From Ascidiella aspersa (Eukaryota), in the NCBI GenBank assembly GCA_963924565.1, contig OZ004611.1, positions 23,498,001-23,562,000 of the forward strand: 64,000 bases of DNA. The letters are read 5' to 3'. A program made the translations under genes and the position numbers. Of the stretch, positions 24,907-44,309 are shown piece after piece. Numbering within the stretch: the stretch's first letter is position 1; every line of letters begins with the position of its first letter. A model generated the notes under the pieces. The model was not told the origin of the DNA. It was given only the letters and a program-made list of their open reading frames with translations, and did no database searches.

Positions 24907-25791
24907 TTAAACATCCTGCTCAAAGCTCTTTTCAGGGAGCTGTCTCTTGTAGAGTTCTGCAAGGCACAGGGCAGTGGAATAGATTATTTCCCTTCGAGAC
25001 ATTCCTGTTAATGCTCTGTGCCAGTCGGAAGGTTTGACCCAGGGTAACTTGGTTTGAATTGTTTCGCCAATCGTTTTTGCAAGTCCAGACCATCGCAGGT
25101 TGTAGTTATCCGGGGTGCTTTTTTGGGCTTCCAGTATGATATCAGACTCGACAGGAACGGCCATCGTGAACAGTTTAATTGTTATATTGTTTTCGGGATC
25201 TTGCAGAAGCACACAGCCGACGTCGAACCATTGCTCTGGCAACTGCTCAACACTGAAGTTTTCAACAGCAACACAAACCTCATTGGCAGGCACCTTGTTA
25301 GCTTTTCTCAGATGGTTGATTCTTTCCTGTGCGCCTTTTAAACCAGCAGTGTAGCCGACTGGCTGAGCAGCTACATTTGATTGTGCTTCCAAGCCAACCA
25401 CAGTGGCAGCACCAAACACCTTCTGGAATGCATCACGTACGGCACCCCACTTTACCTCCTTGTCGGAAGCCACAACTATCGTTATTTCACCACCTTCCTT
25501 GATGTAGGGAGTCATTCCTGGGTCCAAAGTGGTAATCATGCGATCCATGCTGGTTTTCGTCTTTTCCATAACCTTCTGCATGAATTGATTGTTGGATGCA
25601 GACTTGATCCAATTCCAAACACCGCCATGGTTCTCTGCCTGATCGGCCACTGTATCAGGACTTGTTGTTTCTGATGGCTGCTCCAAAGGCTTGTCTTCAC
25701 TTTTGGTGACTGGACTATCCTGGGCAACTGGAGCCTCCGCTGCTTTATTAGCCTCTAACTTTAAATCACTCGATGCAACAGGATCCATCAT
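24907..25791 (-). CDS. PRRC1: PRRC1 homolog (YjjX-like NTPase I/T domain), single coding exon, 294 aa
   Basis: Uninterrupted ORF with GGVWNWIK, KVMEKTKTSMDRMITTLDPGMTPYIKEGG, IVVASDKEVKWGAVRDAFQKVFG, QSNVAAQPVGYTAGLKGAQERI and DWHRALTGMSRREII. An acceptor (ttaattctag) lies 6 nt upstream of the ATG. Confidence 0.93.
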   Translation of the reverse strand: MMDPVASSDLKLEANKAAEAPVAQDSPVTKSEDKPLEQPSETTSPDTVADQAENHGGVWNWIKSASNNQFMQKVMEKTKTSMDRMITTLDPGMTPYIKEGGEITIVVASDKEVKWGAVRDAFQKVFGAATVVGLEAQSNVAAQPVGYTAGLKGAQERINHLRKANKVPANEVCVAVENFSVEQLPEQWFDVGCVLLQDPENNITIKLFTMAVPVESDIILEAQKSTPDNYNLRWSGLAKTIGETIQTKLPWVKPSDWHRALTGMSRREIIYSTALCLAELYKRQLPEKSFEQDV

Positions 25792-27379: not shown

Positions 27380-32208
<4,829 letters not shown>

Positions 32209-34137
32209 TTTGCGAGCGACGGTACGCCGGGTTTCGAGGGGAGTTTTCTCGCCGATCGCCATTTTTTTTTTGAAATTCCACACGGCGTTTCGGGAGGCGT
32301 TTTCCGGCGCGCGTTTTTGGTGCTCGCCAGGCGGACTTCATTGCGAGGCGAGACGGCGCCGGGTGGTGGAGAGACGTGGGAATGACGTTCCAACGTTGCT
32401 ATTTCCAGCAAATCGTTTCCGGCAACACCGGTCAATACTGATATTGTTCAAAGATCTACTTGAAACGTCTACTTGCAATAGTTCGACCTGGCTCGTTTGG
32501 CCCAATAGGCCGCGTGCTCTTTTGACCTGTTCACGTTTATTTTGGCTCACGCGCCTAGCTCGAATGTTTCTCGCGTATAGCGATTGACATTACGATCCAG
32601 CACGTCAGATTTCTTCGAGCCAGCAGCCTGAATTGGAAAATAAGAAGTAACTACTGCTGTAATGCCTTTAGATCCCTGTCTTTTTAACTTTTTAGCAACG
32701 GAATACTTGATGCGTAAAAATCTGTTACGAAACACCAAACTAAAGTTGATTATATACTGCATTAAAATAAACAACGCAACAACATTTTTTTACTTTCAGT
32801 TTTTTTTGTCCTATATTTGAACCTGTTTGAATAAGAACAAAAAATATATTCGGATGTGTATATTATTGTACTTAAGCAGCAAACAGGAAATTCCCATCCT
32901 ATAATCACACAATAATAATTCAAGCATTCTTGATGAAGCATTTGAACTGCTGATAAGGGTTTCTTACTTTCATTAAACAAAGACAACTTGCGTTCATTGT
33001 GTTAAACAAGGTGAGACTAAAGCATTAGTCTAATTTATACATTCGTTGCCGAACATCTGAAATCTTTTACGGAACACTAGTGTTTCGCGGAATAGCGATT
33101 GAAAATTACTTTCTTCAGGGGCCCTTTCTCAATTTTAATGCTGACCTTTTGTCGAGAAACTTTTTATCTTGTGTTGCCGTGGAAGAGTTCTAAAGAACGT
33201 TTAGGGCCCACCGAGTAGACAAGTTCGAAAATCAAATACCAAAGCGACCTGACATTTACTTCCAGGTTTTTGGCACGATCGGTTTAATGCGTGTGTTATC
33301 TTGGTTTCGTTAAAAATACGCCACTATATCACATCCACCGGTGTGCAATTTCTAATAAAATCAGTCGTTCATACGAACGTATCTCGTGTGATTTCCTGCA
33401 TCGTTGTTAATCATTTGAAAACACTTAGCTGTTTTTTTATTCGAAATTTAAGCAACCAATGAGCAGCAGCTGAGGTTTAGACCAAGTTTTGCGATAAAAA
33501 CATTGTTGATAAGAGGCTTGAGGTTTAGGTTGTTTTCCACAGACTGTATAGACTAGTGCTTCACAATCTGTGTGCCGTTAAACATGTCAGGTGTGCCGCG
33601 GTGTAACTGGCTTTTTTTCAAAGGCACGTTACTTTATTCGCGAAAAGTCGTAATTTAGAAACAATTTCTAAACAAACCGAACTACCAGGCCATCAGCGCG
33701 CTCAAACTATTCAACAATTGTTTACGTCTTTATACGTAAGCGGAACCACGTAGTTGTAATCCATACGCATGCAACTTCTATGGAGAATGTTAGGCATTTT
33801 TGTTATCTGCCTTGGTTCGCACCGTAATCTTTTATCTTGGTTAGTATTTCAAAATCCAAGTCAAACAGTAAAGACAAAAGACAATGTTTCAGTTAGTATA
33901 ATTTTCACAATGCCCTTCAATATCCAAACAATAACCAAAAATTTATTCCTGCTGTCATGCACGCCCGTATAGTGTTGTCCTTGGCTATAAAGCTTGGAAA
34001 TAAGTTAGGTGCACAACTGCTACGGTCGTTCCAACTTTATTGACATGAAGCTGAATATAAGTACAGCGGCGAAAGATGATACGTGTACAGGGGATGGCTG
34101 AAATATTGCCGACAGTCGCGCTTGATCAACGACTTCT

Positions 34138-37100
34138 TTAACGGTGGTGCTCCTCTTCACAATCATTTGGGATTTTACTAAAGACCCTGGTGCACTTCCG
34201 GCCTGCAAAAGCGTAACAAAGACACGTTACAAATATAAAACAAAACAGTAGATAATATGTTGAATGTGAAGTAGACAAGCTACATAATATAGTGCCGCTA
34301 TTTAAAAAAAAACGTATAGCATAATACACAGTTAAGCGATCAAATTGTGCTGTAACAGTGAAAGATACACGGACATATGTGTTCAACAACTGTAGTCTAG
34401 TCCTGTGCTTCCCAACCAGTGGGTCACGAAGCTATTTAAGGTGCGGTTCCGAAGCATTTGTAAATATTACAGTTTCCATTAGATTGGAAAATGAATGCAT
34501 AATCATTACGTAACCTTTATGCAGCAATGTAACAAATACGTAACAATTATATGTTTTGTGTGGCATTAACCATTTCAGTATACGTACGCCAGTAGTAAAG
34601 ATGCAGGTTTTATGTAACTTAATTTGTTTGGTCAAATTTTATTGAGGCACGCACAATAAAACTTGCATTACAAGTGGGGCGCGAACTGAAAAAGGCTGGG
34701 AAGCACTGGTCTAGCCCTTCTGAAGATCATAAAGGCTGGTCATAAAGTTTTAAAAATGGTCATTTAACAGCTTTAAAAGGGCTAGATTACAGTTGTCAAA
34801 CACATATGTGTGTATATCTTCGATTGAATGATATAGCGCTGTAGATTCCCATTGTACAGTTGCTTGTAGGCTTAACATAGTGGAGCAAGCTTTGACGTAT
34901 GGTTGTTTCTCGACTTTTCTGAGTCATTTTAGCTCATTTTGCAGAGCAGCAGACCCGGTAAGGTCGGAGATTTCAATTCTTTCTGCAGGCTTATTGTTTT
35001 TCTAGCTTGCCCTGCTTGCATCATTAATCGATAGATTAGTTTGTCTGCAAGGACTTTCGGAGGGTATAGTAACAGTTTCGACTTTATCTGTGGGTGCAGT
35101 TGTTACAGCGTTGCTTGCCGCCATTAAGTTAAAGTTCACTTTATTAGGCTTTCGTGATATGCTTGACATTGAGAAAACCTCGATGCAAAAGTAAAGCTGG
35201 ACCTATGGTCACCAAACAATGATCCGCTGGGATTTTAATGTCTTGAGCATTTTTGTTTTAATGCCTTCAGCATTAATAAAGATAAGATATGTTTAGCGCT
35301 TGTAGTAAATATTTAGAATTCCGGTTCGTCAAAAAAAGTCCATTTTTGCCGCAAGTTTATTGTTTTTACGGTCCTGGTTACTGGATTATTGGTAGACAAC
35401 TGCACTCCTGGTTACTGGATTATTGGAAGACAACGATATTGCATGGGTCGTCTTACTGTGATGGGCCGTCGTACAACTTCTAATGCATTGTGCACATGGA
35501 CACAGTATGTCGTGAACATCATCGAGGACTTTCTGCAGTTTTTTATTAGAAAGTCCGAGGTGGTCTGCGCCACACTTCCTCAATGCTGCTTTTCGATCTG
35601 AAAAATAAAAGAAGTGAAAAAGTTTCATTGGCATCGCATTAATATGATTGGCAAAACTCGGTTACAGGAGAAGGCCGCGTAATATTAAACTGGTTAATAC
35701 CATACGTAACATGAGAACCGACGGGTATTTTATCTATAAGTCTATTATTCAAACAATTTTTTTAATTTGAAGTTAACATTACTTGACAACGTGCTAAAAA
35801 ATTGGCGATGAGTTAGCACAGAAAAGATAGAAGTTTTACGGAAAAATGCCGCGAGTCGGAATAAACAGCTTAGCGCTCGCGGACCATTTTCTTGCCCGAA
35901 CGCATGAACAATTGAACATGTTTAGAGACGAATTTCCGCCCTAACGGGGGAGCGTATAACGAGTATGGTAGCCTAAAGAAACCTAAGGTTCTCGTTTCAT
36001 CTAGTGCAGAAATATGCTGCTAGAAGCTTTCTAATTGCATTCAAGAAAGATTTGCGCGTACAAATACCATATTTTTGTATCAGTACGGGCGTTTGTGTAA
36101 GAACAGTTTAATGCTGTTGCCGGCCGTCCCAGCTTCCTTTTACCACTGCACTGTCACGGACCGTATTTAGTCCATGTCCGACTAGTAGACTCCTATTCGC
36201 TTTTGTCTACAACAATACTCGCAATAGAAACCACAAAACACAAGGAAGTTATTTGCAAGGCAGCATGCAAAACTCGATTACTTTTCCCTAAAGCTTGTCT
36301 GCAATCTTGAATGGCTTTTATTGTGTCGCATTCATGGCAACCAGTTTGGCAAGCGTCATCGGCTTCTCCCACACAGTCCATAACTAAAAAACATAAAAAA
36401 CATAGATGTTTAAAAACAAGCTAGGTCAACTTTTACTTAAATTTTGCTATTAGTATTTCTCCTTTCGAGCTGGGGCCGGACACCTTTTCCTATAGTCGCG
36501 GACCAAAGTCAAATACTTTTGAAGTGTTCGGCGGGCCGTGATAAGTTTTAACTAATAATATTTTTTTAATACGTGAAAATTTTTGAACTTTTGAAAAAGA
36601 CAATCGTTTATGAAGGGCGGGCCTAGGATTTTTTTAATTAAAACCGGGTCTTATTATATTTAGTAAAAAGCCGGTAATGCTTTCGTTAATTGCATTTCTT
36701 TGGTGTTATATTGGAGTCCACACGGTGTCATACATCGTCACATTGAAAAGGCCCTGCATAATTGACGCTTCATCGCCGGCAAGTAAAGTTTAAGAACATA
36801 AAATCTGCTAACTTTTGTTTCAAAGCTATGCTGTTTAAAAACTGATAAACCATGTAATAAACGCAGCAAAACCATTGCATTTATGATTTTCGAAAAGGCT
36901 CGCATTGTGAAAATTCTAGTTGATTGGTGTACCAAGTACAATAAACCCCCAGAAATACAAAATTAAAATGTTATGTTTCGTTTTCTTAACGTTATTATAA
37001 AGCGGTTTGATGTGTAGGACTTTAGAACATAAGCTATTTTATAGGTCAGTTGTGGTGATAAAAAAAGGTTGCGGGGCATTGTTTTTAGGAATGTTGTTTG

Positions 37101-37278
37101 CCAGTTAAGTTAGAGATTGACTACGGTTTGTTTAACATTATTTGCACTACGTGCTAAGAACCAAGATGTTTGAACGATGAAGTAAAACTACCTTACCTGT
37201 TATAACATGTTTGAACAAAGAACCATAAACAGCATATGTAAAAGTGGCCAGCAAACACAGACCTAACAATAACTTCAT
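34138..37278 (-). CDS. Secreted Cys-rich small protein, paralog A (vanabin-like Cys spacing), 4 exons, 129 aa
   Basis: Exons 37197-37278, 36282-36383, 35457-35597, 34138-34202; all introns phase 1. Protein: MKLLLGLCLLATFTYAVYGSLFKHVITVMDCVGEADDACQTGCHECDTIKAIQDCRQALGKNRKAALRKCGADHLGLSNKKLQKVLDDVHDILCPCAQCIRSCTTAHHSRKCTRVFSKIPNDCEEEHHR*. Signal peptide, 12 mature Cys, AATAAA at 34036-34041, same exon structure as paralog B. Confidence 0.85.
34403..34708. mobile_element. Third copy of the cagtgcttccca MITE family (paralog A intron 3)
   Basis: Termini ctgtgcttccca ... tgggaagcactg; TSD gtctagtc/gtctagcc. Confidence 0.85.
34925..35068 (+). mobile_element. Degenerate copy of a tRNA-headed SINE-like element
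   Basis: ccggtaaggtcggagatttcaattctttctgcaggcttattgtttttctagcttgccctgcttgca aligns to the reverse complement of 49495-49560. Confidence 0.6.
35372..35434. repeat. 34-bp tandem duplication
   Basis: tcctggttactggattattggwagacaac occurs twice. Confidence 0.85.
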
Positions 37279-37967
37279 TTCCGATTTTAAGTTGCTCTGT
37301 AACCCAAGAAATAGAATTTGCAACGTTTACAGGACATTTTAAGCGGTAAAACAGTGTTTAATGAATAGCATTTTGATTTCAAAAAAAGATGACTGGAAGC
37401 GTTTAAAACTATGTGTTGTAAAACTTTAAAACTGAATTAGTCCTCAAGCACAACATACAAAATATATTGATGCGCTATCACAGCGACTTTCTGATGTGCA
37501 ATTTGTGACATAAGGACACCAATTTGCGTAAAACCAAATTTGCCGTTTGGTGTTTCTTGTTCCGAGGGCATTTTTCAATAAAAACAGCGGTACGCATAGT
37601 TAAGTCTCCGTACATTCCTGAATAGGTATAGCTGATGTTCTTACTTCCCGACCAGGAAAATATCCCGCGTTCACTATACTTACTACTGGTTAAATTATTG
37701 ATAAGGATTTCTTATAATATTGCTATATTGTACTAAATAATAATCAACCTAATTTGGTTGATATATATGATAATTATAGGAATTGGTTACTGTGACCAAA
37801 ATTTGTTAGTTTCGATATATTTTTTGTACTGTGCGGAAAAATGCTCCATTACCGAACGATATGATTTTAATAAAAGTCCAGTACCTCATTATTTTGGAAA
37901 ATTAACTTCAAACTGCATTCAACAATCTTAATCTTCTCCTAGCTATACGGCAAACAACTTAACCAAA

Positions 37968-38003
37968 AACTGACATATCAACCAGGTACGTTTGCCCTTT
38001 ATA
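37968..38003 (-). promoter_or_regulatory. Core promoter of paralog A: TATA box plus Initiator
   Basis: Minus-strand TATAAA starts at 38003; TCAGTT (TCAKTY Inr) has its A at 37971, placing TATA at -32. Paralog B shows the same layout. Confidence 0.7.
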
Positions 38004-39133
38004 ACAACCGCTAGTCTAGATTTCGCAACCACGTTTAAAATCACCAACGCCCCCCCTTTTTCACTTCTGCCTCTTTGCCTTTTTCTTTTCGATTGTACGC
38101 GCCGCTTTAAAATTGACTGACGCCTTTTTCCTTTAAAAAGTCAAAAAAATGAAACTAACACCAAAAAGGCCGACGGCCTTTCAACTTTCCAAGATGTTGC
38201 AATTTCACATGGTTTATACTATGAAGTGCAGAGGAATTTCATCGCACACCATTTAGACAAGACAGATTGGCTTAAATATTCTAGTCTCTCTAGCGATTCT
38301 AGTGAGGATCAGACCGACACTACACACGGGTCAAGATCAAATTAAAATATTTTCGGACTTATATTAGAATAATTAAAAAAACACGGGTAGTTTTTGCACG
38401 AAGCCAGAAAATATTGAATAATGAATATATCTGGGTTTGCATGTAATCGGCAGCACAGAACCTGAAACTCAGCAATGTTAGTTTTTGGTCAACTTATTTT
38501 ACAGTATTAACTATTTAGGATTTTTCTGTTATAGCCCTTTTTGGGGAACCAAAAGTAAACGCGACAGAATTTCGGCCAAGATTAAATTTTAGTCGAAACC
38601 ATTGGAGCTAGCATGTTAATATTTTCCTCCTAATGAACATATGTCTCTACCGGTCTATACTTTGTCAACTTAAATAATAAAACTAATTCCGTGTTTTAAA
38701 CACCACTAAAGAATCATACTAGTTTGCTTTCATTTGTAATTTTCCGTTTTATCTCTCCACCCTGTTCATTGCATTTTAAAGAAAATTTTGCGCTTCTGTT
38801 GCTCTATTTTTGCCCCTAACACTGTCAAACTCCTTCATTTTTCTCCCTCCTTTTTTGCTTATACCAAGCCAGCGAAATAAACTTACATCCAGCCAAACAA
38901 ACCACTAGTCCGCTTTTTTGCGTGAGCAAGATTCAATTCCATTTTTGTCATCAAGTATAAGCCTGTATAGTGCTGTCTTTGACAACATGACTTCGAAGTA
39001 AATTAGATGCACGAGTTACGAAGGCAGATCAGCTTTTATGCTGCTAAAGTAATGACAGCGTTGCGGCGAAAAATGCTACGATTACAGGTGTTGGGTGGAA
39101 TATTCCGACAGTCGCGCTTGATCAACGACTTCC

Positions 39134-42100
39134 TTAACGGTGGTGTTCCGCGTCACAATTGGCCGGGATGTTATCAAAGATCGTGGTACAAACAGGGTCT
39201 GCAAAAACAAAGACACGTCACTGAAAAACAAAACATATATGCTGAGTGTGAAGCAGACGTGCTATATCAGGGGTCGGGAACCTATGGGTCGCGAGCCATA
39301 TATGGCTCTTTTGATTATGTAATCTTGCTCGCAGATAAATCTAAGCTATTTTATTTCTTATCATGACTTAAATAAAACGGCCATGACCCATTTCAAACTG
39401 TAATTCTGTTAATTTAAAACTGCCTAATAACAGTTTTTCCGTGCTTCACGCGAATCCTATTCGTCTTATCGTGGCTGTTAACCGATTTAAAGAAACCCCA
39501 TTTGCCTCCTAAAGGCCCTTTTCGTACCATGGTTCTCAATTTTTGTAAACTTAGCAAACATATTTTTTCGCGCTTACTATGTTGTCTTTTCAAATGGTCC
39601 ATTTTAAATTACTATTTTGGCCAACCAAAACAATTGTTGAACAATATAATACGGCTCTCATGGAAATACAACCAAAAATATTCGGCATATATGGCTCCCT
39701 TAGCTGAAATAGTTTCCGACGCCTGTGCTATATAATATATAGTGCTGCTATTTTTGAAAAGATTTAGCTTTGCACAAGCTAAACGCCGTTTTACAGCTAT
39801 TTGGAAGTTGAGTGAAAAAGTGGGTTATTGCAGGTTCGACTTTCTCTGTGCGCGTGCATTTGTAGCGCCATAAAATATAAATGCACTTTTTAATTTTTCG
39901 ATCCTTGACATATATTAATCTTGGATGCAAAAATAAAGCTGGACCAATGGCCACCAAACAATATGACACAGGGCTATAACGCGCAATGTACAATTTAAAT
40001 TTTGACAGTTGCTTAAAAAGAAGAGTTTTCACTGGAATTAATTCGGTCGTTTTATTAGAAATCCTCTTCTTGGAAAACACTTTTTAAAAAAATAGTTTTT
40101 GTTGTAATTTTTTCCAAGTAATTTTATAAAATAGCGCGATAAGAAATATCGAAATGTGCTGCAAATTCAACAAAAATGGATTCACAAGCTAAAACGTCGT
40201 TTTCTAGAGTCTTATAGTTGAGTATGCAAAGTGGGTTTACGGATTCGACAATCTCCGAGCGTGAATATATTTGTTGCCTATCCGCTTTTCACTAACTTTT
40301 TTTTTTTGTTTTTTACTTTTTTTATAACTTGTATAATTTTGCTTCGTTACGCTGGACCAGCGGTCAGCAAAATACTGTCCGCGCAGTTATCCTGTGGCAT
40401 ATTTCCTTAATGGAATTTGATAAACCTTTATCCACGGATATTAACGGTAATCTTTGTCGGATGCAAATATAATCTAGAATTTTCACGCGAACATAAATCT
40501 AAATTTGAAATTTAAATTGTTCCACAGTTTTATAAAGTATAAATTTTGTTAAATCATAACGTTTCCTTTGTTTAGTTTCAGAAAAGGCAAGAAAGTTCGA
40601 CGCAAAAGTTATACCCGTCCCGTGATAGCCGTTCCATACATTGTCCTGCCCCTTGAATAAAAATGTTTTGCCCTTCGCTGGATGCTGGACCATTTATTAA
40701 TTTATGGTTCACCCCGAGTCGTTTTTGGCCATGTTTGCAAAGTAGCAGTTCTTTAACTTTCAGATCTGGCGCAACTGCTCCTAACGTTGATAAACGATTC
40801 GTGTAAATATCGAGAAGCTTGACTAATCGAAAAAAATGGTAGTTTTGCCCTGTTTTGCAACGTTTTAATGGCGGTTTAATTAAGCCCTCCTGGTTATAAT
40901 GACCCTCATGGTTCATGAGTGTAGGCAACAATACGAACACGGCGTGTATGTCGTCTTACCGTTATTGGCGCAATGTTTTAGGCAGTTTGCGCATTTACAC
41001 AGCAGCAAGTGGGCGCAGTTTTGAGCTTCCATAAGGCTACAGATGTCAGAATTTGGGCAGCAATGTTTATGGGCACACTTTCGAGCTACCGTTCTTCGAT
41101 CTGAAACAACAAATAGAGAGGGATTTAGCGGACACCCACCGCAGCTCACATGCCAGGAACAAGGGTTGTCAACACAACTGTATACTTGTAGAATATCTAT
41201 TTCTCAAAAAGAGCTCGTAACGACAAACTTTAACGTTAGATTCATTCGGATTAAGGAACTGATGATGTCATTATAGGCGAAATATATATTCTTTAAAAAA
41301 AATCTGATCCTGGTTTTACTCGGGTTTTTAAACTTAGTTTTTGTTAACACTAGGCGTTTTCCGTTATCCAAGTTGTAAGGTGATAGGAAAAGATTTTTAC
41401 AAAATAACACTGGGTGCAGAAAGCCTTACTATAACTCGTTTTACAAGCCAAGTTGTAATCAGTTAACAACTTTAGACATGGCTATAGGTCAGAATAGAGT
41501 AGACAATAGCCATGTTTAAACATTGGGAACACAGCTATATGGGGCAACAGTTTTGCATTTTTTTATCAAAATCACACTAGAATAAAAAACGTATTTTACA
41601 ACTCTATTCAGTCTAGACTGAGTTAGATTTGTTTCACAGCAATATAGAGAAAGGGAGTCGCAAAGCGACAGAAAGTGTCAATGCAAGACAGCATACAAAA
41701 CTTGATTACTTGGATTTTTTGACTTGTTCTTGCAACTCTGGATTTCAAACACGTTTTTGCATTGACGGTTGCAGTTACTTCTACAACTGTCAACAGCTGA
41801 TTCCACGCACGCTCCAACTAAAAAACACAAAATACAATTGAGTATCTCGAAGCTATGTATGTATAACAGTGGTTCTTAACTTTTTTTCTACCACGCCCCC
41901 TTTGGTAATTGTCCTGTGCCTTGTGTCCCCTTAAATAATAAATAATTATCATACTAAAAGTAATTCGGTATTTTTCAAGTATATATCAATAAGACAACAG
42001 AAAACTCAAAAGTTTACTCCCAATTGCGCGAAAAAATGCCTTTAATTCGTTTGATTTGGGTAAACTTCAATATAGGAGAACTGACAAATTGGGCACACAA

Positions 42101-42754
42101 AATATTGGTCGTGCTCGATATATTGGTTTTCGTCAAGCTGATTTTGACAAACATGTTGTGAAGATAGTAAGGCTACACGGAAACCATGTAAAGCTGTCGC
42201 CAGAAGCGTCAAAATTAAACATTACGAATCATGTTTTAAAAAAGTGTGATGACACAAAAGCAAAGGCTATACTGCAAATAACTTTACAAATATGCGCAAA
42301 AAATTCTCATTTCCAACCAATTTGTTATATACTAATGACAGGTTTCCGCGAATGGCAAATGTTTTCCACATTTTTGTTGTTAAAGTCGGCAAAACCACCT
42401 TTTGTGGAGAGGTTGGCATGGTACCCAACCCCCCTGTACAGACAAATACAACATGGAACCAAAAAATCATTATAAAAAGTTAAATATTGGAGTACATCTC
42501 GCGCCTCCTCCCGGTTGAGAACCACTGGTACATATGGGTTTGTTCAGTTATGAGTGGCAGGCTGGCAGCAAATCTCCAACCGCAAGCAGATAACTTTTAT
42601 TTAAAAAAATCCTAATAGGTAAACCCTGAATGGACGAACCGTCAAGGCGAAGCTATAACAATTTACCTGCACGAAGATGACCTTCCACCGACCGTCTTCC
42701 ATGGGCAACATAGGCAAAGGCGACGAGCAGACACACTCCGATAAAAAACTTCAT
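39134..42754 (-). CDS. Secreted Cys-rich small protein, paralog B (vanabin-like Cys spacing), 4 exons, 133 aa
   Basis: Exons 42667-42754, 41710-41817, 40960-41100, 39134-39198; all introns phase 1. Protein: MKFFIGVCLLVAFAYVAHGRRSVEGHLRAVGACVESAVDSCRSNCNRQCKNVFEIQSCKNKSKNPNRRTVARKCAHKHCCPNSDICSLMEAQNCAHLLLCKCANCLKHCANNDPVCTTIFDNIPANCDAEHHR*. Signal peptide and 16 mature Cys. Confidence 0.87.
39268..39725. mobile_element. hAT/Charlie-like MITE (paralog B intron 3)
   Basis: Termini caggggtcgggaac ... gtttccgacgcctg; perfect 8-bp TSD tgctatat; subterminal gagccatatatggctc. Confidence 0.9.
41251..41296 (+). ncRNA. Minimal type I hammerhead ribozyme motif
   Basis: ttaaggaa CTGATGA t gtc attata ggc GAAA tata TA|ttctttaa. 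Stem I is 8 bp (one GU), stem II is 3 bp, helix III is a palindromic tetranucleotide; predicted cleavage after 41288. Confidence 0.7.
41867..42527. mobile_element. hAT-like MITE (paralog B intron 1)
   Basis: Termini cagtggttcttaac ... ggttgagaaccactg; no clean TSD. Confidence 0.7.
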
Positions 42755-43353
42755 TTTTGACCTTAAGGTTTTTTCGCTACTCGAAAAAGGCAATAGAACG
42801 TTTGTAGTATAGTGTAAGCTTTAAACAGCGTTACACGAATAACAATGTATACCAAAAGGAATATTGCTTGAACGGTCAGGTTTTAAAACTGTATACTTAC
42901 CAAACCAAGTTTACTTTCAACAAATATTATGACCTTTGGCCCAAAAACAAATTAAAAAATATCTCCCTATATTAGTGAATACATTTATATTTGATGTTAA
43001 TCATTTATGATCCAATAAACGTAAAATCGTCGTCTCTTATGAGTCGCCAAACGCTTTATATCGGCACACAGCCCGTAGCGTCCCATACATATATTATTAT
43101 ATATGTCTGATCCTGGTTTTACTCGTGTTTTTAAAATTTTATTAATTAAACATTAGGAAAATAAATCCGACGCAACCATTGCACTTTGGCAAGACACTAA
43201 TATCGTTTTTTTAAATCGAGTTTGCCATACCCGTCGCAAAATAAATGCTATAGCAACGTTGATTTTCATAGGCCGAAAATTAATTTTTGAAATTGTAACG
43301 CGTTAAATTAAAAGGCTGCTACGTCTCTAGTCTGTCCAAAGTGCTTACTTGTA

Positions 43354-43388
43354 AACTGACATGGCGAGACTGCGCGCCGTCCCTTATA
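43354..43388 (-). promoter_or_regulatory. Core promoter of paralog B: TATA-like box plus Initiator
   Basis: Minus-strand TATAAG starts at 43388; TCAGTT has its A at 43357, placing TATA at -31. The ~100 bp upstream aligns with the paralog A upstream region. Confidence 0.7.
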
Positions 43389-44309
43389 TCACAACAGCTG
43401 GTCCTTTTTCACTTATACCTCTGTGCCTTTTACCCCGTTTTCAAACGCACGTTGTTGCTTTAAAGTCGGTTGACTTCCCTTTCTCTAAATTGCGCCAAAA
43501 TAAAAAATGTATAACAAAAAGCTACACAGTTGGGCCTGCGGTTTCTTTTCCACAGGTCGTATTTTGTACAAAGTAATATCATAACTTACCGTAAGCGGTT
43601 AAGGGCTAATAATTTGTCTGCGTCTTTTCACGCGAAATATTCGCGCGTCATTCGTAAAACCGAGAAATAATCTTGCTCAGATAAATACTTCTGCAAGGTA
43701 AAAGTTATTGTGTTAAAAACATAATAATTGTTTGTTTTTTAAATTTGGCTCGAATCGCAATAGTCATATGAAAATTCATGTAAAAACATTAAAATTTTCA
43801 CATTACGTTTACTATAAGATTCTGTAAGTCAATTTTCATAAAAAAGACGTGTCTTTATTCGATTAAACATTGTGTATTTTCTTTAAAAAACAAAGTTCAT
43901 TGTCACATGAACTTTTACATGAACAGTGTTGTTTCTTTCATATAAAAACATCGACTGTTTCTAGCACACTTGTTCCCAAGTTATTTGGGCTCAAGGCACC
44001 CTAACGCAAAATATAAATAGTCTGCAGCACTCTTGCGTTTTTGCTTTGTGGTTTACTGTGATGTCACAGTAAACTGAATTTCAGCACTATATAAGAACCG
44101 TACGTAATTTTAAAACATACCTAATTAATAGTATGCACAAAAATTGTGTCGCGAAGCGTACCAATAGGGCAAAGATTATAATCCAAAGGAAATTCAAATA
44201 TTTCGTGAAACTCTTGAGCGTTAGAAAAGGCACCGCGGTTGTAGCACTATATAAGGGCATATATTTATCTATACTGATTTCATATGTTTTTTTGAAAGTC
44301 TTTTTAAAT

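What the first reader, a model, noticed from the sequence alone, without database searches (positions are those of the whole stretch)
34138..42754. Tandem pair of unrecognised secreted Cys-rich proteins resembling a remodelled half-vanabin with a His-rich tail
Seen: two 4-exon genes that the ORF track only shows as fragments. Both have a signal peptide, phase-1 introns, 12 shared mature Cys and a C-terminal EHHR*. Paralog B reads C-x3-C-x3-C-x5-I-x2-C-x3-S-x7-V-x3-C-x4-C ... C-x2-C-x3-C. From memory, the N-terminal part of the ascidian vanadium-binding Vanabin2 is C-x3-C-x3-C-x5-C-x3-C-x3-C-x8-C-x3-C-x4-C-x6-C-x2-C-x3-C, with nested disulfides C1-C12, C2-C11, C3-C10, C4-C9, C5-C8, C6-C7. On that register both partners of the innermost bond (C6/C7) are lost together, and paralog A also loses both C4 and C9, as expected for homologs. 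The vanabin C-terminal three-disulfide arm appears replaced by a new tail. Inference: a divergent, possibly metal-binding or immune, secreted protein family.
Basis: partly seen in the sequence, partly recalled or inferred. Interest (0 to 1): 0.8.

Follow-up and report, generated by a model that had tools for sequence, protein, structure and literature searches.

The report
Tandem VBP-129-like metal-binding protein genes
Two neighbouring sea-squirt genes encode small secreted, cysteine- and histidine-rich proteins; they do not look like remodelled vanabins but match the little-known blood-plasma metal-binding protein VBP-129, so they are new members of a known family.

Summary
Two intact minus-strand genes, A (34138-37278) and B (39134-42754), each have four exons, three GT..AG phase-1 introns, a signal peptide, 12 shared mature Cys (B has 16) and a C-terminal EHHR. 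RNA-seq reads confirm the exon 1-exon 2 junction of A to the base (127 reads). B is silent in that one run.

The vanabin reading is not supported. This genome has a real four-gene vanabin cluster on another contig, and Pfam Vanabin-2 detects it. The A/B exons get no Pfam hit, hhalign probabilities are 2% or less, and their Cys spacing fits vanabins no better than shuffled sequences do.

A published Ascidia sydneiensis samea transcriptome prints VBP-129, a 129-aa plasma vanadium/metal-binding protein. Its Cys spacings are 9-3-3-8-15-21-2-6-5. B has 7-3-3-8-15... and A has 7-3-2-8-14-23-1-2... A against VBP-129 gives z=4.6 (0 of 3000 shuffles); B shares an exact four-spacing run (1 of 3000). All three also share a basic linker, a V-H...L...C helix motif, about 6-7% His and an acid/His tail.

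Best reading: tandem VBP-129-family genes. The whole-protein fold and residue-level statistics could not be run, because neither the spliced models nor the VBP-129 letters have a reference. This scan had not noted the pair before.

The parts
37197..37278 (-). Gene A exon 1 (ATG at 37278): signal peptide plus the first mature residues. The 5' ends of transcripts lie at about 37296-37297.
   Evidence: Sequence. RNA depth is about 38; 12 molecules end at 37297; 127 reads splice out at 37197.
36282..36383 (-). Gene A exon 2: first Cys cluster, C-x7-C-x3-C-x2-C-x8-C.
   Evidence: The loose-end consensus of the RNA reads equals 36354-36383. AF2 of this piece is partly helical, pLDDT 69.5.
35457..35597 (-). 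Gene A exon 3: basic linker, Cys6, a long helix with the V-H-D-I-L motif, then C-x-C-x2-C-x3-C.
   Evidence: AF2 of this piece gives helices 2-13 and 17-44, pLDDT 66.8.
34138..34202 (-). Gene A exon 4 (coding part): two Cys, the EEEHHR tail and the TAA stop at 34140-34138.
34036..34137 (-). Gene A 3'UTR, with AATAAA at 34041-34036.
   Evidence: Sequence. RNA reads reach at least 34079.
42667..42754 (-). Gene B exon 1 (ATG at 42754): signal peptide.
   Evidence: No RNA reads in X7.
41710..41817 (-). Gene B exon 2: C-x7-C-x3-C-x3-C-x8-C.
40960..41100 (-). Gene B exon 3: basic linker and nine Cys, four of them absent from A.
   Evidence: The only variant seen in two other individuals is synonymous, at 41096.
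39134..39198 (-). Gene B exon 4: two Cys, the DAEHHR tail and the stop at 39136-39134.
34102..34149 (-). A block of about 48 nt covering the last codons, the stop and the first 36 nt of the 3'UTR. It is 46/48 identical to B 39099-39145, while the surrounding DNA is about 71% identical.
   Evidence: Only two copies in the genome. No fold beyond chance and no Rfam match.
39099..39145 (-). Gene B copy of the conserved stop/3'UTR block.

Best explanation
A and B are a tandem pair of VBP-129-family genes in an ascidian genome. VBP-129 is a 129-aa protein purified from the blood plasma of Ascidia sydneiensis samea. From my own knowledge of Yoshihara et al. 2008 (Biochim Biophys Acta 1780:256), which I could not read here, it binds VO2+, Fe3+, Co2+, Cu2+ and Zn2+ and pulls down the plasma vanabin VanabinP.

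Inferred mechanism: the precursor is secreted through its signal peptide. It folds into a mostly alpha-helical scaffold pinned by 6 (A) or 8 (B) disulfides; the mirrored spacings C-x3-C-x2/3-C ... C-x2-C-x3-C suggest an antiparallel three-rung ladder. It carries metal ions on His, Asp and Glu clusters, including the conserved helix His and the acid/His C-terminal tail, and so acts as an extracellular metal carrier or chaperone in body fluid.

Shown here: the gene structure, transcription and splicing of A, the paralogy of A and B, and the match to the VBP-129 Cys framework. Inferred: the fold, the metal binding and the plasma location. A is the abundantly expressed copy. B is intact but silent in the single RNA sample examined.
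For: The VBP-129 contig is printed in supplement 2 of PMC9486056. It is 129 aa, starts with the signal sequence MKF..., has ten mature Cys spaced 9-3-3-8-15-21-2-6-5, and ends in an H/D-rich tail.

A is 129 aa with spacings 7-3-2-8-14-23-1-2-3-8-10. B is 133 aa with 7-3-3-8-15-....

Permutation tests on Cys positions gave these results:
- A against VBP-129: chain score z=4.7 and 4.6, with 0 of 3000 and 0 of 2000 shuffles as good, and a run of 7 consecutive spacings within 2 residues (0 of 3000).
- B against VBP-129: an exact run of 3-3-8-15 (1 of 3000), z=2.3-2.5.
- The genome's own vanabins against VBP-129: only z=1.1-1.4.
- A/B against vanabins: z=-0.8 to 0.7.

By eye, all three proteins have a strongly basic 14-15-residue linker before Cys6. 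The residues that are invariant between A and B in exon 3 recur in VBP-129: R, R, H and L are identical, and K, L and A are replaced by similar residues. 'S-R-K-C' in A matches 'S-R-A-C' in VBP-129.

There are 8 His in mature A, 7 in B and 8 in VBP-129, against 2-4 in the local vanabins.

The genome is an ascidian's. It has a vanabin cluster over the Pfam cut-off, with 0 of 14 control genomes hit, and a GH6 domain hit as in tunicate cellulose synthase.

VBP-129-like contigs are abundant in the blood-cell transcriptome, and two are listed (Table 1 of PMC9486056). Gene A is strongly transcribed here.
Against: No residue-level statistic was computed, because the VBP-129 letters have no reference and were compared by eye only. 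Identity is roughly 23-28% in the ungapped blocks, much of it Cys.

VBP-129 has 10 Cys, against 12 and 16 here, and the C-terminal third needs indels of 5-6 residues.

The exhaustive profile search with exon 3 found no relative at E<=0.001, only a spurious repeat protein. The word searches were blank. This has low power: a true vanabin exon was blank as well.

Metal binding, fold and tissue were not tested. The functional data on VBP-129 rest on my memory of a paper that is not held in the library.
Confidence: 0.7

Rival explanations
1. A/B are remote vanabin derivatives that keep the first nested-disulfide helical hairpin (vanabin Cys1-12), with some pairs lost, and replace the C-terminal three-disulfide arm with a new tail.
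For: The local vanabins are also signal-peptide proteins. Their single intron is phase 1 and sits between Cys6 and Cys7, at the turn after the first Cys cluster. Intron 2 of A/B is phase 1 in a comparable place. Vanabins diverge so fast that sequence tests have little power.
Against: There is no PF11437 hit on any exon at E<=10, while the same model scores 34.8 and 31.9 bits on the local vanabins. Genome-wide scans with PF11437 and with a local vanabin profile never touch the window. hhalign probabilities are 2%, 0.9% and 0.3%, and the whole-length hit is in the wrong register. The Cys framework is no better than shuffles, z=-0.8 to 0.7. Composition differs, with less Lys+Arg and more His. There are four exons rather than two. 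VBP-129 fits much better.
Confidence: 0.1
2. A/B are a lineage-specific, fast-evolving family of secreted Cys-rich effectors (antimicrobial, immune, reproductive or signalling) with no metal function. The resemblance to VBP-129 is then convergent, the result of a disulfide-stapled helical design.
For: No relative was found in 1.84 billion representative proteins, Pfam, PDB sequences or the ESM Atlas. The paralogs are only about 30% identical outside the Cys. One individual (X2) carries four nonsynonymous variants within six codons of the mature N-terminus of A. The proteins are mildly basic, pI 8.0 and 8.7.
Against: The Cys-framework match to VBP-129 is specific: it was not reached by any of 3000 shuffles for A and is not shared by helical Cys-rich vanabins. 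The shared non-Cys features (basic linker, helix His, S-R-x-C, His richness, acid/His tail, same length) are not what convergence alone would give.
Confidence: 0.15
3. Gene B is a decaying or silenced duplicate and only A is functional.
For: There are no RNA reads on B exons 1-3 in run X7. The AATAAA of A reads CATAAAA at the aligned place in B. High-copy repeats lie in the introns of B (depth spikes at 39260-39459 and 41260-41459).
Against: The reading frame is intact. All six splice sites are canonical. All 12 family Cys are kept, and the extra Cys come as an even number, four. The only exonic variant in two other individuals is synonymous. Only about 6% of one RNA run, of unknown tissue, was read.
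Confidence: 0.25

Closest known systems
VBP-129 (vanadium-binding protein of 129 aa, blood plasma of Ascidia sydneiensis samea; sequence in supplement 2 of PMC9486056, contig ID 66)
   Same: Signal peptide and precursor length (129 aa against 129 and 133). The first six Cys have the same spacing framework (3-3-8-15 is exact in B). A long Cys-free helix is followed by C-x2-C. There is a basic linker before Cys6 and a conserved V-H...L...C motif. His content is about 6-7%. The C-terminal tail is acid/His-rich. Two related transcripts are listed in A. sydneiensis, and two genes are present here.
   Different: VBP-129 has 10 Cys, A has 12 and B has 16. The first spacing is 9 rather than 7. The last third differs by indels of 5-6 residues. 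The tails differ (...HDRHDDH against ...EHHR). Residue identity is only about a quarter. No function has been measured for A or B.
Vanabins (Pfam PF11437 Vanabin-2; Vanabin2 structure PDB 1VFI); local copies at G000 C3 25.475-25.497 Mb (L003, L004, L005, L022)
   Same: Ascidian-specific, small, with a signal peptide, disulfide-rich and predicted helical. They have C-x2-C-x3-C motifs and a phase-1 intron after the first Cys cluster. They belong to the same metal-handling biology: from my own knowledge, VBP-129 interacts with VanabinP.
   Different: Vanabins have 18 (or 16) Cys in a different, conserved spacing and two exons. Two of the three local vanabins are Lys/Arg-rich (24%), and all three are His-poor. 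The Pfam model, the profile comparisons and the Cys-framework tests all fail for A/B.
Disulfide-stapled helical hairpins in general (CHCH twin Cx3C/Cx9C proteins, plant alpha-hairpinins)
   Same: Mirrored C-x3-C-type spacings on two helices imply an antiparallel helix pair cross-linked by a ladder of disulfides.
   Different: These are unrelated lineages and cellular compartments. This is only a structural analogy and was not tested here.

Membership tests
Vanabin (PF11437) | A match to the Pfam Vanabin-2 model at or above the 25-bit cut-off | tested here: not met
   No hit at E<=10 on any A/B exon peptide. The genome-wide six-frame scan hits only C3 loci. As a positive control, local vanabin exon 2 peptides score 34.8, 31.9 and 18.5 bits.
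Vanabin (PF11437) | 18 (rarely 16) conserved Cys with the family spacing (...C-x2-C-x3-C-x6-C-x4-C-x3-C-x13..17-C-x2-C-x4-C) | tested here: not met
   A has 12 Cys and B has 16, with different spacings. The Cys-chain score against three local vanabins gives z=-0.8 to 0.7. PMC9486056 states the 18-Cys, nine-disulfide rule.
Vanabin (PF11437) | Bow-shaped four-helix fold with nine disulfides (PDB 1VFI) | tested here: inconclusive
   Only single exons could be folded. Exon 3 is helical (pLDDT 66.8) and exon 2 is partly helical (pLDDT 69.5). Foldseek on the exon 3 model gave only generic helix matches with E>1. The whole spliced protein has no reference and was not folded.
Vanabin (PF11437) | A Lys/Arg-rich core, which supplies the amine-nitrogen ligands for V(IV) | tested here: not met
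   K+R is 15.5% in A and 14.9% in B, against 24.6% and 23.7% in vanabins L003 and L004. The divergent L005 has 14.1%. The role of Lys/Arg is taken from PMC9486056.
Vanabin (PF11437) | Two-exon gene with one phase-1 intron between Cys6 and Cys7 (as seen in this genome's copies) | tested here: inconclusive
   A/B have three phase-1 introns. Intron 2 lies after the first Cys cluster, in a comparable place. Phase 1 is common in genes for secreted proteins, so this is weak evidence.
VBP-129 family | Secreted precursor of about 129 aa with an N-terminal signal peptide | tested here: met
   A is 129 aa and B is 133 aa, and both have a hydrophobic N-terminus. The VBP-129 contig is 129 aa and starts MKF.... 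No signal-peptide predictor was available, so this was judged by eye.
VBP-129 family | Cys framework C-x9-C-x3-C-x3-C-x8-C-x15-C-x21-C-x2-C-x6-C-x5-C | tested here: met
   B has 7-3-3-8-15 and A has 7-3-2-8-14-23-(1)-2. For A, z=4.6-4.7 with 0 of 3000 shuffles as good. For B, the exact four-spacing run is reached by 1 of 3000 shuffles. Vanabin controls are not significant. The last two spacings differ by indels.
VBP-129 family | His-rich mature protein with an acid/His C-terminal tail | tested here: met
   There are 8 His (7.3%) in A and 7 (6.1%) in B, and 8 in VBP-129 by count. The tails are EEEHHR, DAEHHR and HDRHDDH.
VBP-129 family | Statistically significant residue-level similarity over the whole length | not testable with these tools
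   The VBP-129 letters come from a paper supplement and have no reference, and the spliced A/B models have none either. A by-eye alignment gives about 26-28% identity in two ungapped blocks of 34 and 25 columns.
VBP-129 family | Binds VO2+, Fe3+, Co2+, Cu2+ and Zn2+, and interacts with plasma VanabinP; located in plasma | not testable with these tools
   The biochemistry is recalled from Yoshihara et al. 2008 (own knowledge; the paper is not held). Here only the abundant transcription of A was shown.

The most novel reading that the evidence does not exclude
The VBP-129 family, including A and B, and the vanabins could be two branches of one ancient ascidian superfamily of disulfide-laddered helical-hairpin metal carriers. 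The evidence here neither supports nor excludes this: the sequence tests have little power, because even true vanabins barely recognise each other.
Probability: 0.1. Interest if true: 0.5.

Novelty: new member of a known kind. Interest (0 to 1): 0.3.

Why it matters
To my knowledge, VBP-129 is known from one biochemical study in one species and has no Pfam model, so genome annotation pipelines miss it. This locus gives the family a gene structure: four exons, all introns in phase 1, and a tandem duplicate. It also shows which features are conserved across ascidians: the first six-Cys framework, the basic linker, the helix His and the acid/His tail. A and B are two natural variants, with 12 and 16 Cys, that could be used to ask how plasma metal carriers hand vanadium and other metals to vanabins. 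This is useful for ascidian metal biology and annotation, but it is not a new kind of system.

Tried and rejected
- **Pfam** on all six exon peptides gave nothing relevant.
- **PDB sequence searches** with exon 2 and exon 3 of B and with the exon 3 profile gave nothing or chance hits. A profile of the true vanabins also failed to find Vanabin2 in the PDB copy, so this route has little power.
- **Word-based protein searches** with the ORFs that contain exon 3 of A and of B, using the region option, were blank. A true vanabin exon was blank too.
- **Exhaustive HMM search** of 1.84 billion representatives with the exon 3 profile returned only P0001, a repeat-derived protein that I judge spurious.
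- **ESM Atlas** gave no usable hit for exon 3 of A or of B.
- **Own-genome searches** with exon peptides, exon profiles and the 3' DNA found only the two copies. Weak hits with E of 0.24 or higher were not followed.
- **AF2** of exon 3 and of exon 2 alone gave helical models of modest confidence. Foldseek on the exon 3 model gave generic helix-turn-helix matches with E>1, which are meaningless.
- **Conserved 3' block:** RNA folding showed no structure beyond shuffles, and Rfam over 33000-44000 gave no match at E<=0.1.
- **A bacterial promoter scan** was irrelevant to a eukaryote.
- **Other families considered by eye and rejected:** phospholipase A2 (there is no Ca loop and no His-Asp after the CC), saposin-like proteins, the IGFBP N-domain and insect OBPs (Cys patterns differ).
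- **The original VBP-129 paper** could not be read.
- searching or folding the joined spliced proteins, and any tool comparison using the VBP-129 letters, because neither has a reference. Exons were joined only inside scripts, from window coordinates, for counts and local comparisons.
Full report
**What is there**

The window is AT-rich eukaryotic DNA from a 308.6-Mb, 75-contig assembly, at C5:23498001-23562000. Reading the minus strand and translating the exons by reference gives two four-exon genes.

| Gene | Exon 1 | Exon 2 | Exon 3 | Exon 4 |
|---|---|---|---|---|
| A | 37278-37197 | 36383-36282 | 35597-35457 | 34202-34138 |
| B | 42754-42667 | 41817-41710 | 41100-40960 | 39198-39134 |

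A script that joined the exons from window coordinates confirmed complete reading frames of 129 and 133 aa, six GT..AG introns all in phase 1, and 12 and 16 mature Cys.

The exon-by-exon alignments show about 30% identity in exons 2 and 3 and 50% in exon 4, with every Cys of A aligned to a Cys of B. The local alignment score of A against B lies 19.6 standard deviations above shuffles. DNA homology remains at the promoter/exon 1, at exon 2 and at exon 4/3'UTR. The whole mature proteins are 6-7% His.

**Are they expressed?**

- RNA run X7 is from the same species label, and about 6% of it was read. It covers exon 1 of A at a depth of about 38, on the strand expected for a minus-strand RNA.
- Molecules end at 37296-37297, which marks the 5' end of the transcript.
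- 127 reads leave the genome at 37197. Their consensus equals window 36354-36383, ending exactly on the first base of exon 2. The exon 1-exon 2 junction is therefore confirmed.
- Six reads that touch the B copy of the conserved 3' block continue into the 3'UTR of A at 34079-34108. The 3' end of A is therefore transcribed too.
- Junctions 2-3 and 3-4 of A lay outside the stretch and remain unverified.
- B exons 1-3 have no reads. B is nevertheless intact, and its only exonic variant in two other individuals (DNA runs X1 and X2) is synonymous, at 41096.

**Family size and organism**

Exon peptides, exon profiles and the 3' DNA find only these two copies in the genome.

The genome is a tunicate's and, more narrowly, an ascidian's. 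Pfam Vanabin-2 finds a cluster on contig C3 over its curated cut-off, with 0 of 14 control genomes hit. A glycoside hydrolase 6 domain, as found in tunicate cellulose synthase, is also present.

**Testing the vanabin idea**

The true vanabins of this genome served as a positive control. There are four tandem genes at C3 25.475-25.497 Mb (L003, L004, L005, L022). Each has two exons with one phase-1 intron between Cys6 and Cys7, 18 or 16 Cys, and Pfam scores of 34.8, 31.9 and 18.5 bits on exon 2.

Against this control, A and B fail every sequence test:

- There is no PF11437 hit at E<=10 on any exon.
- They are never touched by genome-wide scans with PF11437 or with a local vanabin profile.
- Exon-wise hhalign probabilities are 2% and 0.9%.
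- Whole-length hhalign, run in a script, gives 0.3% in a non-collinear register.
- Pairwise scores are z=-0.2 to 2.6.
- A Cys-position chain score is no better than shuffles, z=-0.8 to 0.7.
- Composition differs: 15% Lys+Arg against 24% in two of the three vanabins, and 6-7% His against 1.5-3%.

Two caveats apply. Vanabins diverge so fast that one true vanabin pair reaches only z=2.95, and a vanabin profile fails to find Vanabin2 in the PDB copy. Remote homology therefore cannot be excluded. The phase-1 intron after the first Cys cluster is a weak point in its favour.

**What they match instead**

No library gave a hit: Pfam, PDB sequences, two word searches, the exhaustive search of 1.84 billion representatives (only the spurious P0001), and the ESM Atlas.

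I recalled that a 129-aa plasma vanadium-binding protein, VBP-129, had been described in Ascidia sydneiensis samea, and looked for it in the literature. Supplement 2 of PMC9486056 prints contig ID 66, labelled 'vanadium-binding protein VBP-129'. It is 129 aa, has a signal-like start, and has ten mature Cys spaced 9-3-3-8-15-21-2-6-5. Gene B reads 7-3-3-8-15-..., and gene A reads 7-3-2-8-14-23-1-2-3-8-10.

Only the spacing numbers were typed into a script. The results were:

| Comparison | Result |
|---|---|
| A vs VBP-129 | Chain score z=4.7 and 4.6 (0 of 3000 and 0 of 2000 shuffles as good); seven consecutive spacings within 2 residues (0 of 3000) |
| B vs VBP-129 | Exact run of four spacings (1 of 3000); z=2.3-2.5 |
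| Local vanabins vs VBP-129 | z=1.1-1.4 |

By eye, the three proteins also share:

- a 14-15-residue, strongly basic linker before Cys6;
- the residues that are invariant between A and B in exon 3 (R, R, H and L are identical in VBP-129; K, L and A are replaced by similar residues);
- an S-R-x-C motif;
- 7-8 His;
- an acid/His C-terminal tail.

Table 1 of the same paper lists two VBP-129-like contigs among abundant blood-cell transcripts. That parallels the two genes here and the strong expression of A.

**Mechanism**

From my own knowledge of Yoshihara et al. 2008 (BBA 1780:256), which is not held in the library, VBP-129 is a plasma protein. It binds VO2+, Fe3+, Co2+, Cu2+ and Zn2+ and pulls down VanabinP. 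An N-terminally truncated form loses V and Fe binding.

I therefore read A and B as secreted metal carriers or chaperones. AF2 of single exons predicts helices: exon 3 gives helices 2-13 and 17-44 at pLDDT 66.8, and exon 2 is partly helical at pLDDT 69.5. The mirrored spacings C-x3-C-x2/3-C and C-x2-C-x3-C suggest an antiparallel three-rung disulfide ladder. The fold, the disulfide map and the metal binding are inferences.

**Limits**

Exons were joined only inside scripts for counting and local comparisons. The VBP-129 letters also have no reference, so residue-level statistics were left out. That comparison rests on Cys spacings and a by-eye alignment.

**Verdict**

The pair is real, and A at least is expressed. 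The vanabin homology is not supported. The pair is best filed as new members of the known but obscure VBP-129 family (confidence about 0.7), and interest is modest. The scan's earlier notes on this genome do not mention this pair.

Noticed in passing
window 34102-34149 and 39099-39145 (minus strand): A block of about 48 nt spans the last four codons, the stop and the first 36 nt of the 3'UTR. It is 46/48 identical between A and B, while the flanking DNA is about 71% identical and the rest of the coding sequence has diverged to about 30% amino-acid identity. This is either a short gene-conversion tract or a selected cis element. The conserved EHHR end may partly reflect this nucleotide-level constraint. 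It has no fold beyond chance and no Rfam match.
   Followed up: partly
G000 C3:25475189-25497042 (loci L003, L005, L004, L022): A tandem cluster of four true vanabin genes. Each has two exons with one phase-1 intron between Cys6 and Cys7, and 18 or 16 Cys. Two are over the Pfam Vanabin-2 cut-off.
   Followed up: partly
window 37200, 37201, 37212, 37215 (gene A exon 1): The genomic contig of DNA run X2 carries four variants within six codons of the mature N-terminus of A. All four are nonsynonymous by my reading (F>L, K>Q, I>M, T>A). None of the roughly 127 RNA reads of X7 carries them. The N-terminus may be hypervariable or unconstrained.
   Followed up: no
window 39260-39459, 39660-39859, 41260-41459, 41860-42260, 42460-42659: High-copy repeats lie inside the introns of B, where genomic word depth rises 4- to 65-fold and contigs break at 39268/39312 and 41303/41335. 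They lie in or near the area that another note calls hammerhead/retrozyme motifs. Rfam at E<=0.1 found no hammerhead between 33000 and 44000.
   Followed up: partly
window 35073-35220 and 39831-39962: A stretch of about 150 nt in intron 3 of both genes is 71% identical. It is either a remnant of the duplicated intron or a shared repeat.
   Followed up: no
window 31861-32205 (+) and 24910-25791 (-): Neighbouring ordinary genes: an exon encoding the NKAP C-terminal domain (Pfam E=8e-48), and an intronless 294-aa ORF with an NTPase_I-T (DUF84) domain (E=6e-13).
   Followed up: partly
window 40550-40691 and 40881-41049: A run labelled as a different organism (X4, organism B) holds low-depth contigs that are 99-100% identical to B intron 3 and exon 3, unspliced. 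This is probably DNA of the same or a very close species in that sample.
   Followed up: no
G000 C5:19613851-19614090 (L024): A glycoside hydrolase family 6 domain hit over the Pfam cut-off in an animal genome, as expected for tunicate cellulose synthase.
   Followed up: no
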